Part shown: positions 21,419 to 21,508 of the stretch, in pieces
Layout of the letters: each line of letters starts with the position of its first letter
How positions within the stretch are numbered: the stretch's first letter is position 1
NCBI RefSeq assembly: GCF_006345805.1
Contig: NW_021835594.1
Span: 1 to 25,761, forward strand
Direction of reading: 5' to 3'
Length of the DNA stretch: 25,761 nucleotides
Source: Octopus sinensis
Taxonomy: Eukaryota
Position numbers and translations under genes: made by a program
Notes under the pieces: model-generated
The model's input: the letters and a program-made list of their open reading frames with translations, nothing else
Told to the model about the DNA's origin: nothing
Database searches by the model: none

Positions 21419-21508
21419 AAATAAATGAAAGAATGGAGTTGAACGACGATTTAACAAAATTCCTTTATTTTGTTAAATCGTCGTTCAACTCCATTCTTTC
21501 ATTTATTT
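21419..21508. other. Perfect 42-bp inverted repeat with a 6-nt loop
   Basis: AAATAAATGAAAGAATGGAGTTGAACGACGATTTAACAAAAT (21419-21460), loop TCCTTT, exact reverse complement at 21467-21508. Confidence 0.97.

What the first reader, a model, noticed from the sequence alone, without database searches (positions are those of the whole stretch)
21419..21508. Perfect 42-bp-stem hairpin with a 6-nt loop in otherwise decayed sequence
There are zero mismatches over 42 bp of mostly non-repetitive sequence, while neighbouring elements are heavily diverged. It must therefore be very recent, homogenised by intra-strand repair, under selection, or an artefact. It has no recognisable TIR family or clear TSD. 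Candidates: template-switch inverted duplication (a proposed route to new miRNA/hpRNA genes), endo-siRNA precursor, cruciform site, or minimal MITE.
Basis: partly seen in the sequence, partly recalled or inferred. Interest (0 to 1): 0.7.

Follow-up and report, generated by a model that had tools for sequence, protein, structure and literature searches.

The report
Young perfect 90-bp DNA palindrome
A real, flawless 42-bp-stem hairpin sits in repeat-rich non-coding animal DNA; it is most likely a recent copying accident (or a tiny transposon) of a known kind, and nothing here shows that it has a function.

Summary
Arms 21419-21460 and 21467-21508 are perfectly complementary over 42 bp around a 6-nt loop (TCCTTT). 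The chance expectation in this window is about 1e-18. It is the only long perfect inverted repeat here that is not a microsatellite.

The window is non-coding, microsatellite-dense eukaryotic DNA carrying tRNA-derived SINEs; from memory it looks like octopus, which I could not test. The hairpin lies between a 142-bp unique stretch and a (TA)n(TG)n tract that begins an old SINE 3' half (67-69% identical to its relatives). Zero differences in 84 sites means at most about 0.036 substitutions per site. So the palindrome is young, or kept perfect.

Best explanation (about 0.5): a one-step local inverted duplication by snap-back or template-switch DNA synthesis next to a (TA)n tract.

Main rival (about 0.3): a Made1-like minimal Tc1/mariner MITE, or a deletion remnant. 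The unit 21418-21509 is flanked by TA on both sides, but its terminal bases mismatch and the right-hand TA lies inside a TA microsatellite.

No Rfam family is matched, and the 6-nt loop is atypical for a pre-miRNA.

Copy number, orthologous state, read support and small-RNA output could not be tested, because no collection reachable here contains this host's DNA.

Ordinary; low-to-moderate interest.

The parts
21419..21460 (+). Left arm of the palindrome (42 nt, 26% GC, non-repetitive)
   Evidence: (I9)
21461..21466 (+). 6-nt spacer or loop, TCCTTT
21467..21508 (+). Right arm, the exact reverse complement of the left arm (0 mismatches in 42)
21415..21418 (.). Left outer edge, ATAC. C21418 is the first unpaired base. 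TA at 21416-17 is the possible left copy of a TA target-site duplication under the MITE reading.
   Evidence: direct reading; flanks printed
21509..21512 (.). Right outer edge, ATAT. A21509 mismatches C21418. TA at 21510-11 is the possible right copy of a TA target-site duplication, but it is already part of the (TA)n tract.
21277..21418 (+). Left flank, 142 bp, unique in the window, lying between a 106-bp (AT)n tract (21171-21276) and the hairpin. It is contiguous with the left arm under the template-switch model.
21509..21539 (+). (TA)n(TG)n microsatellite that abuts the right arm and begins the SINE 3' half. It is a candidate replication-stall or return site (template switch), or a TA-rich insertion target (MITE).
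21540..21745 (+). Old, strongly diverged copy of the 3' half of the window's tRNA-derived SINE family (67-69% identical to the copies at 19385-19590 and 18379-18535). It serves as the local yardstick of decay.

Best explanation
This is a young, local inverted duplication made in a single step by snap-back (intrastrand) or interstrand template-switch DNA synthesis, during replication or break repair beside a (TA)n tract. One arm, probably the left one because it is contiguous with the unique left flank, is ancestral. A nascent 3' end that had just passed ...AACAAAAT-TCCTTT(-AT) dissociated, most plausibly at the hairpin-prone TA microsatellite. It folded back on the AAAAT/ATTTT stretch and copied 42 nt of its own strand. 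It then returned to the original template inside the (TA)n run, leaving arm-loop-arm. The product is a neutral structural mutation that can extrude as a cruciform in DNA, or fold into a perfect 42-bp dsRNA hairpin if it is ever transcribed. Shown: the structure, its uniqueness in the window, its youth relative to its neighbours, and its position at a microsatellite. Inferred: the mechanism, which arm is ancestral, and neutrality.
For: (1) The inverted copy lies immediately next to its source with only a 6-nt spacer, and complementarity stops abruptly at both outer ends; no extended or decayed inverted repeat lies in the flanks. This is the geometry produced by template-switch mutations, which create perfect stems in one event, with documented events of 28-83 nt (PMC10710096). 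(2) The arm and the left flank occur nowhere else in 25.7 kb, by exact search with up to 3 mismatches, by blastn with word size 7, and by nhmmer --max. The arms are also not derived from the adjacent SINE (profile search). (3) The arm's 26% GC resembles the local background of 34%. (4) Zero differences in 84 sites beside a repeat at JC about 0.4 implies a recent event: at most 0.036 substitutions per site, about 10 My or less on the published octopus TE clock, if the host is an octopus. (5) The site lies between two TA microsatellites (21171-21276 and 21509-21522), which are self-complementary and known to stall forks. (6) If the right arm is treated as the inserted piece, the junctions carry 2 nt (AT) and 3 nt (TTT) of ambiguity, which is compatible with microhomology-guided switching. 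The reverse model, with the left arm inserted, has none (direct reading; one search prints the hypothetical ancestor). (7) The first bases outside the perfect stem do not pair (C against A). This is expected for a copying event that simply stopped, and less expected for transposon termini.
Against: No outgroup or allelic sequence could be obtained, so the single-arm ancestral state, which is the defining evidence for a template switch, is untested. The junction microhomologies are short, A/T-only and counted after the fact, so they could be chance (a few per cent to tens of per cent). A 42-nt event is at the long end of typical template switches. The unit 21418-21509 is flanked by TA/TA, and 'two TIRs plus 6 bp' is exactly the Made1 architecture. 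Recently active Tc1/mariner elements are reported in octopus. Genome-wide copy number is unknown.
Confidence: 0.48

Rival explanations
1. It is a Made1-like minimal Tc1/mariner MITE, or the in-situ remnant of a DNA transposon after abortive gap repair. In this reading a 92-bp element (21418-21509) consists of two ~43-bp terminal inverted repeats and 6 bp of internal sequence, inserted at a TA at the edge of the (TA)n tract. The arms are perfect because the copy, or the family, is young.
For: The architecture matches Made1: two 37-bp TIRs flanking 6 bp, nearly perfect palindromes derived from the mariner Hsmar1 (PMC1784062). TA lies directly outside positions 21418 and 21509. Removing the unit and one TA gives a plausible empty site...TTTTTTAATA|TATATATATATTG. 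The element would start with 5'-CA. Octopus vulgaris is reported to have 73 recently active Tc1-Mariner families with 1553 insertions, and 65 singleton 'MITE' calls (PMC13282606). A microhomology-mediated route from Tc1/mariner elements to MITEs is documented; this rests on the title and abstract of PMC3814204, not on a full reading.
Against: The two terminal bases do not pair (C21418 against A21509), although termini are normally the best-conserved part of a TIR. With 0 changes in the other 84 positions, a single change landing on a terminus is a priori about 2%. The right-hand TA is inside a TA microsatellite and so carries no information, and the left TA has roughly a 10% chance expectation in this A/T-rich context. 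No other superfamily's target-site duplication fits (2-10 bp checked by reading). There is no second copy or diverged relative of the arm in the window, and no other MITE-like inverted repeat in the window. The termini (CAAATAAATG) do not resemble the usual Tc1 CAGT or mariner YYAGGT ends (from memory). No transposase is present in the window.
Confidence: 0.3
2. It is an assembly, polishing or library artefact: a fold-back chimera fixed into the consensus, so the organism's DNA carries only one arm.
For: Perfect palindromes are a classic product of snap-back synthesis in vitro, for example in MDA or end-repair (general knowledge). The site is bracketed by TA microsatellites that are hard to sequence and polish. 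No reads were available for checking.
Against: Read-level fold-backs have arms as long as the read and sit at read or contig ends. Here a 90-bp palindrome is embedded between different, non-palindromic flanks on the two sides. The arms resemble no sequencing adapter that I can recall. They match nothing in the plasmid collection and nothing in the prokaryotic or viral collections. A chimera would need majority read support to survive consensus calling.
Confidence: 0.07
3. Whatever its origin, it is a functional, selected hairpin: a hairpin-RNA, miRNA or endo-siRNA precursor, or a protein or cruciform recognition site, whose perfect pairing is maintained by selection or by intrastrand repair.
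For: The hairpin is extremely stable as RNA and as DNA. Both candidate origins are documented sources of new miRNA genes: Made1 gave rise to mir-548, and template switching gave rise to at least 18 human miRNAs. Coleoid cephalopods are reported to have expanded their miRNA repertoire (PMC9699675; title and abstract).
Against: No Rfam family reaches its gathering score. The best sub-threshold hits (mir-2513 at 48.9 against 89; mir-1781 at 47.3 against 68; plant MIR8562 at 49 against 211; bacterial sRNAs) fall on both strands and are generic hairpin matches. The 6-nt loop and the bulge-free 42-46-bp stem differ from the preferred pri-miRNA geometry. A run of six T lies immediately upstream on the + strand (21408-21413). 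There is no evidence of a transcription unit or of conservation. Selection for pairing would tolerate compensatory and G-U changes, so 100% identity points to youth rather than constraint.
Confidence: 0.06

Closest known systems
Template-switch mutation (TSM) hairpins (Ripley quasi-palindrome model; Löytynoja and Goldman; Mönttinen et al. 2023, PMC10710096)
   Same: A perfect reverse-complement copy sits directly beside its source with a short loop and abrupt ends. It is made in one event in previously unstructured sequence. The stem length falls within the 30-55 window those authors use for miRNA-like products.
   Different: Here the ancestral state is not observed, so the four switch points cannot be placed. 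The event would be a net insertion next to a microsatellite. No transcription or processing is known.
Made1 / hsa-mir-548 (mariner-derived palindromic MITE; PMC1784062)
   Same: The layout is almost identical: two long TIRs (37 bp in Made1, 42-43 bp here) around exactly 6 bp, about 80-92 bp in total. TA dinucleotides are possible on both sides. It forms a near-perfect hairpin on either strand.
   Different: Made1 is a family of thousands of diverged copies with a known autonomous parent (Hsmar1). Here only one copy is seen, it is perfect, its terminal bases mismatch, no parent is known, and there is no sequence similarity to any known family.
Palindromic AT-rich repeats and other cruciform-forming short inverted repeats (non-B DNA)
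   Same: It is an A/T-rich perfect palindrome with a very short spacer. It is predicted to extrude as a cruciform or hairpin and to be a fragile, recombination-prone site (review PMC12887540 listed).
   Different: PATRRs are hundreds of bp long. This one is 90 bp with a complex, non-dinucleotide arm sequence.
Animal hairpin-RNA (endo-siRNA) loci and pre-miRNAs
   Same: It forms a perfect intramolecular duplex long enough for Dicer to cut (about two 21-nt units).
   Different: Known hpRNA loci have much longer stems. Pre-miRNAs have bulges and loops of 10 nt or more. There is no family match and no expression data.

Membership tests
Template-switch (snap-back) inverted duplication | The reverse-complement copy is adjacent to, or overlaps, its template, with a short spacer and sharp boundaries | tested here: met
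   42/42 complementarity, a 6-nt spacer, and no extended inverted repeat in the flanks
Template-switch (snap-back) inverted duplication | The ancestral or orthologous sequence carries a single arm, and the derived sequence is explained by one switch-and-return path | not testable with these tools
   The host genome is absent from every reachable collection. The arm and a high-copy SINE control both gave 0 hits in the metagenome and prokaryote-genome collections (the arm also in viral contigs), and ORF look-ups and protein searches were empty.
Template-switch (snap-back) inverted duplication | Microhomology at the switch points | tested here: inconclusive
   There are 2 nt (AT) and 3 nt (TTT) of junction ambiguity if the right arm is the insert, and 0+0 if the left arm is. 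The bases are A/T-only, and the ancestor is hypothetical.
Tc1/mariner-type MITE (Made1-like) | Terminal inverted repeats that make up most of a short non-coding element | tested here: met
   Two 42-bp arms plus 6 bp. No ORF carries a Pfam domain.
Tc1/mariner-type MITE (Made1-like) | A TA target-site duplication directly outside paired termini | tested here: inconclusive
   TA at 21416-17 and at 21510-11 flank the unit 21418-21509. However, the termini C/A do not pair, and the right TA lies within (TA)n.
Tc1/mariner-type MITE (Made1-like) | Multiple dispersed copies in the genome | not testable with these tools
   Only 25.7 kb of the host is available, and the arm occurs once there. This says nothing about families with fewer than about 1e5 copies per genome.
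Tc1/mariner-type MITE (Made1-like) | The TIRs are shared with an autonomous transposase-encoding element | not testable with these tools
   There is no transposase in the window, and no repeat library is available. The supplement of PMC13282606 contains no sequences.
Known miRNA / small-RNA family (Rfam 15) | A covariance-model score at or above the family's gathering threshold | tested here: not met
   There were 0 hits at gathering thresholds. The permissive scan gave only sub-threshold hits to unrelated hairpin families on both strands.
Canonical animal pri-miRNA | A ~35-bp imperfect stem, an apical loop of 10 nt or more, and single-stranded basal flanks | tested here: not met
   The stem is 42-46 bp without bulges, and the loop is 6 nt.
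Canonical animal pri-miRNA / hpRNA | Transcription and processed ~21-23-nt reads | not testable with these tools
   There are no expression data. The held supplements of PMC9699675 contain no miRNA sequences, since a let-7 control was also absent.
SINE-derived sequence (the window's tRNA-derived SINE) | Similarity of the arms to the SINE consensus | tested here: not met
   An nhmmer profile of the SINE 5' half finds all four copies (E of 1e-54 or better) but nothing in 21150-21560. In the alignment, SINE homology begins only at the microsatellite after the right arm.

The most novel reading that the evidence does not exclude
The hairpin is a newborn small-RNA locus: a perfect 42-bp hairpin created in one step, by template switching or by a minimal mariner MITE, in a cephalopod genome, already transcribed and diced or A-to-I edited. 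That would catch the first stage of miRNA or hpRNA gene birth in a lineage noted for miRNA expansion and heavy RNA editing.
Probability: 0.05. Interest if true: 0.55.

Novelty: new member of a known kind. Interest (0 to 1): 0.25.

Why it matters
If the single-arm ancestor were found, this would be a clean, datable example of a one-step template switch building a 42-bp perfect hairpin outside primates and rodents, in an invertebrate genome full of fork-stalling microsatellites. If it instead proves to be multi-copy, it would define a Made1-like minimal MITE and imply a recently active Tc1/mariner source in this genome. Either way it is raw material for hairpin RNAs and a likely fragile site. 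As a single unconserved locus with no evidence of expression, it is an ordinary by-product of known mutational processes.

Tried and rejected
**Finding the locus or further arm copies elsewhere**
- Exact look-up of four ORFs spanning or neighbouring the hairpin, and two ORFs 9 kb away, found nothing on record.
- A homology search with the hairpin-spanning ORF returned no candidates.
- A homology search with a repeat-derived 128-aa ORF, intended to identify the host, returned 116 word-sharing candidates, none significant.
- An arm 21-mer gave 0 hits in metagenome, viral and prokaryote-genome contigs.
- A positive control with a 22-mer from the window's high-copy SINE also gave 0 hits in the metagenome and genome collections. 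These negatives therefore only show that the host's DNA is not in those collections.
- The plasmid collection gave no match, which argues against a vector origin.

**Known miRNA**
- Rfam was negative.
- A search of the cephalopod miRNA paper's supplements was negative but uninformative, because a let-7 control was also absent.

**Host identity**
- SINE strings were not found in the paper library, so 'octopus' remains a recollection.

**Origins considered and rejected**
- Derivation of the arms from the adjacent SINE head.
- An extended older inverted repeat with a homogenised core: there is no flank complementarity.
- Target-site duplications of hAT, piggyBac, PIF, Mutator, Transib and P elements: none fits on reading.
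- A Helitron 3' hairpin: too long, too A/T-rich, no CTRR end.
- A tRNA or other structured RNA.
- A protein-coding context.

**Searches not run**
- No query from this non-coding window could be expected to reach the host genome.

Full report
**1. The observation**

Reading the sequence shows 21419-21460, AAATAAATGAAAGAATGGAGTTGAACGACGATTTAACAAAAT, followed by TCCTTT (21461-21466) and then the exact reverse complement at 21467-21508. The repeat finder reports the same pair, extended to 46 nt at 98% (I9). The extension is one mismatch (C21418 against A21509) followed by three more pairs (ATA/TAT). A search for the arm allowing 3 mismatches finds only the two arms, one per strand, with none expected by chance.

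The strand folds at -67.4 kcal/mol as RNA (z = -15.4) and at -45.4 kcal/mol as DNA (z = -19.4). From base composition, 2.5e-18 perfect 42-bp inverted repeats with a loop of 60 nt or less are expected in the window. An exhaustive scan found 1957 perfect inverted repeats (stem >=14, loop <=60). Among the 400 longest, the only ones that passed my complexity filter were this hairpin and its sub-hairpins; the others examined are self-complementary microsatellites.

**2. The setting**

The window is non-coding eukaryotic DNA.
- It gives 79 tandem-repeat rows.
- It has no tRNA genes and no Rfam family at gathering score.
- Every long ORF is a translated microsatellite or repeat, and the ten most protein-like ORFs have no Pfam domain.

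It carries a SINE family with a tRNA-like head, an internal (TA)n(TG)n tract and a 3' half ending ...GCATGGCCGCAGTCAAATGACTGAAACAAGTAAAAGAG.
- Full copies lie at 19184-19590 (+) and 18379-18733 (-).
- Head-only copies lie at 7882-8051 and 17454-17622.

From memory this SINE and the microsatellite density are typical of Octopus genomes. I could not test this, so the host name is a lead only.

Around the hairpin, from left to right, the order is:
- a 106-bp (AT)n tract (21171-21276);
- 142 bp of sequence that is unique in the window (21277-21418);
- the palindrome;
- (TA)n(TG)n (21509-21539);
- a copy of the SINE 3' half (21540-21745).

That SINE copy is 67-69% identical (JC about 0.4) to the two other 3' halves, which are 97% identical to each other. 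A profile of the SINE head recovers all four heads at E of 1e-54 or better but finds nothing in 21150-21560. The arms are therefore not SINE sequence.

**3. Age**

There are no differences in 84 paired sites. This bounds the per-site divergence since the arms became identical at 0.036 or less (95%), with 0.008 as the 50% point. A recent Octopus vulgaris repeat study equates JC 0.065 with 18 My (PMC13282606). On that clock the bounds are about 10 My and about 2 My. These figures hold only if the host is an octopus, the site is neutral, and there is no homogenisation.

**4. Origin**

Two known processes make exactly this object.

(a) *Template switching or snap-back synthesis.* A nascent strand folds back on itself, or jumps to the opposite strand. 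It copies a stretch in reverse complement and then returns. The result is a perfect stem in one event, with documented events of 28-83 nt (PMC10710096). Several features fit this:
- the 6-nt spacer;
- the abrupt ends;
- the absence of any wider inverted repeat;
- the uniqueness of the arm and the left flank;
- the background-like A/T richness of the arm;
- the position against self-complementary TA tracts.

If the right arm is the added piece, the hypothetical ancestor is ...AACAAAATTCCTTT|ATATATAT.... The insert then shares AT with what follows it and TTT with what precedes it. The converse model, with the left arm added, shares nothing. This is compatible with microhomology-guided switching and mildly favours the left arm as ancestral. 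However, the matches are short, A/T-only and counted after the fact.

(b) *A minimal Tc1/mariner MITE.* Human Made1 is two 37-bp TIRs around 6 bp, a near-perfect palindrome derived from the mariner Hsmar1 and the source of mir-548 (PMC1784062). Here the unit 21418-21509 would be two ~43-bp TIRs around 6 bp. It is flanked by TA (21416-17) and TA (21510-11), and its empty site would be ...TTTTTTAATA|TATATATATTG. Recently active Tc1-Mariner families are reported in O. vulgaris.

Four points count against (b):
- The terminal bases C and A do not pair, although everything else does.
- The right TA is part of a microsatellite, and the left TA is a roughly 10% coincidence.
- No other superfamily's target-site duplication fits.
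- No second copy, other MITE-like inverted repeat or transposase is present in the window.

The local evidence is close to neutral between the two, with a slight edge to (a). I put (a) at about 0.5 and (b), including an in-situ deletion remnant, at about 0.3.

**5. Other readings**

An assembly artefact is unlikely, at about 0.07. The palindrome is short and lies between two different, non-palindromic flanks. It has no match in the plasmid collection or the other collections searched. Only reads can settle this.

A selected small-RNA gene has no support. Rfam gives only sub-threshold matches, on both strands, to a mixed set of plant, animal and bacterial hairpin families. The geometry, a 6-nt loop and a 42-46-bp stem without bulges, is not that preferred by the Microprocessor. 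Perfect identity, as opposed to conserved pairing, points to youth rather than constraint.

The structure's physical consequences, namely cruciform or hairpin extrusion, fragility, and a Dicer/ADAR-grade duplex if transcribed, follow from the energies and from general knowledge. They are not demonstrated functions.

**6. What could not be done**

Every route to comparative data failed because the host genome is not in the reachable collections.
- ORF look-ups found nothing.
- Protein searches found nothing.
- Arm scans found nothing.
- The decisive control was a 22-mer from the window's own high-copy SINE, which also returned nothing. The negative arm scans therefore carry no weight on copy number.
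- The cephalopod miRNA supplements held here contain no sequences, since a let-7 control was absent.

**7. Verdict**

The feature is real, non-random and young, and it is of a known kind. It is most likely a one-step snap-back or template-switch inverted duplication at a TA microsatellite, with a Made1-like minimal MITE as a serious rival. No function is indicated.

A single blastn of one arm against the source genome and a sister genome, plus read mapping, would settle the origin. Predicted empty alleles are about 42 bp shorter under (a) and 94 bp shorter under (b).

Interest is low to moderate (0.25). Novelty: a new member of a known kind.

Noticed in passing
window 18379-18733 (-) and 19170-19586 (+): Two near-full copies of the tRNA-derived SINE lie head-to-head as a large inverted repeat (80% identity over 417 bp, 437 bp apart). 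Their 3' halves are 97% identical to each other. If co-transcribed, they would form a long imperfect dsRNA hairpin.
   Followed up: partly
window 7882-8051, 17454-17622, 19184-19355, 18552-18721; 3' halves at 21540-21745 and about 22855-22973: The SINE appears modular. Four copies of the tRNA-like head end at a (TA)n tract, but only two continue into the 3' half. The 3' half also occurs alone, at the hairpin locus and at about 22855-22973. These may be two elements that are often joined at a microsatellite, or the result of frequent truncation.
   Followed up: partly
window 21202-21276: Inside the (AT)n tract about 140 bp upstream of the hairpin there is a second perfect palindrome (36-nt arms, 3-nt spacer). 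A phase-shifting AA at 21233-34 is mirrored by TT at 21244-45. This mirrored interruption suggests that hairpin-templated events have also shaped this tract.
   Followed up: no
window 12255-12657 (and on to about 12860): This is the most GC-rich kilobase of the window (48%). It holds about 6 tandem copies of a 66-bp unit (also scored as 132- and 198-bp periods, 75-77% matches), followed by a unique-looking tail. It is probably another dispersed repeat family of the host. A 128-aa ORF across it has no significant homologue in the protein collection.
   Followed up: partly
window 22014-22500: A long imperfect (GAT/GGT/GAC)n trinucleotide region yields 104-210-aa open frames (poly-His, Pro or Asp) on both strands. 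They look like coding sequence but are low-complexity, and the 210-aa ORF is not on record in the gene collection.
   Followed up: partly
window 10009-10347; 3621-3785; 3977-4315; 6942-7228: Microsatellites are exceptionally long and dense: (CTA)~112, (TA)84, (AGAT)85 and (TA)147, with 79 TRF rows in 25.7 kb. Strong local GC- and AT-skew swings follow them.
   Followed up: no
window 23118-23216: A 41-bp unit (AACTACTTGTGCAAACAATCCAGCCAATCAGAACACACACA) is repeated 2.4 times in tandem at 88% identity. Its nature is unknown.
   Followed up: no
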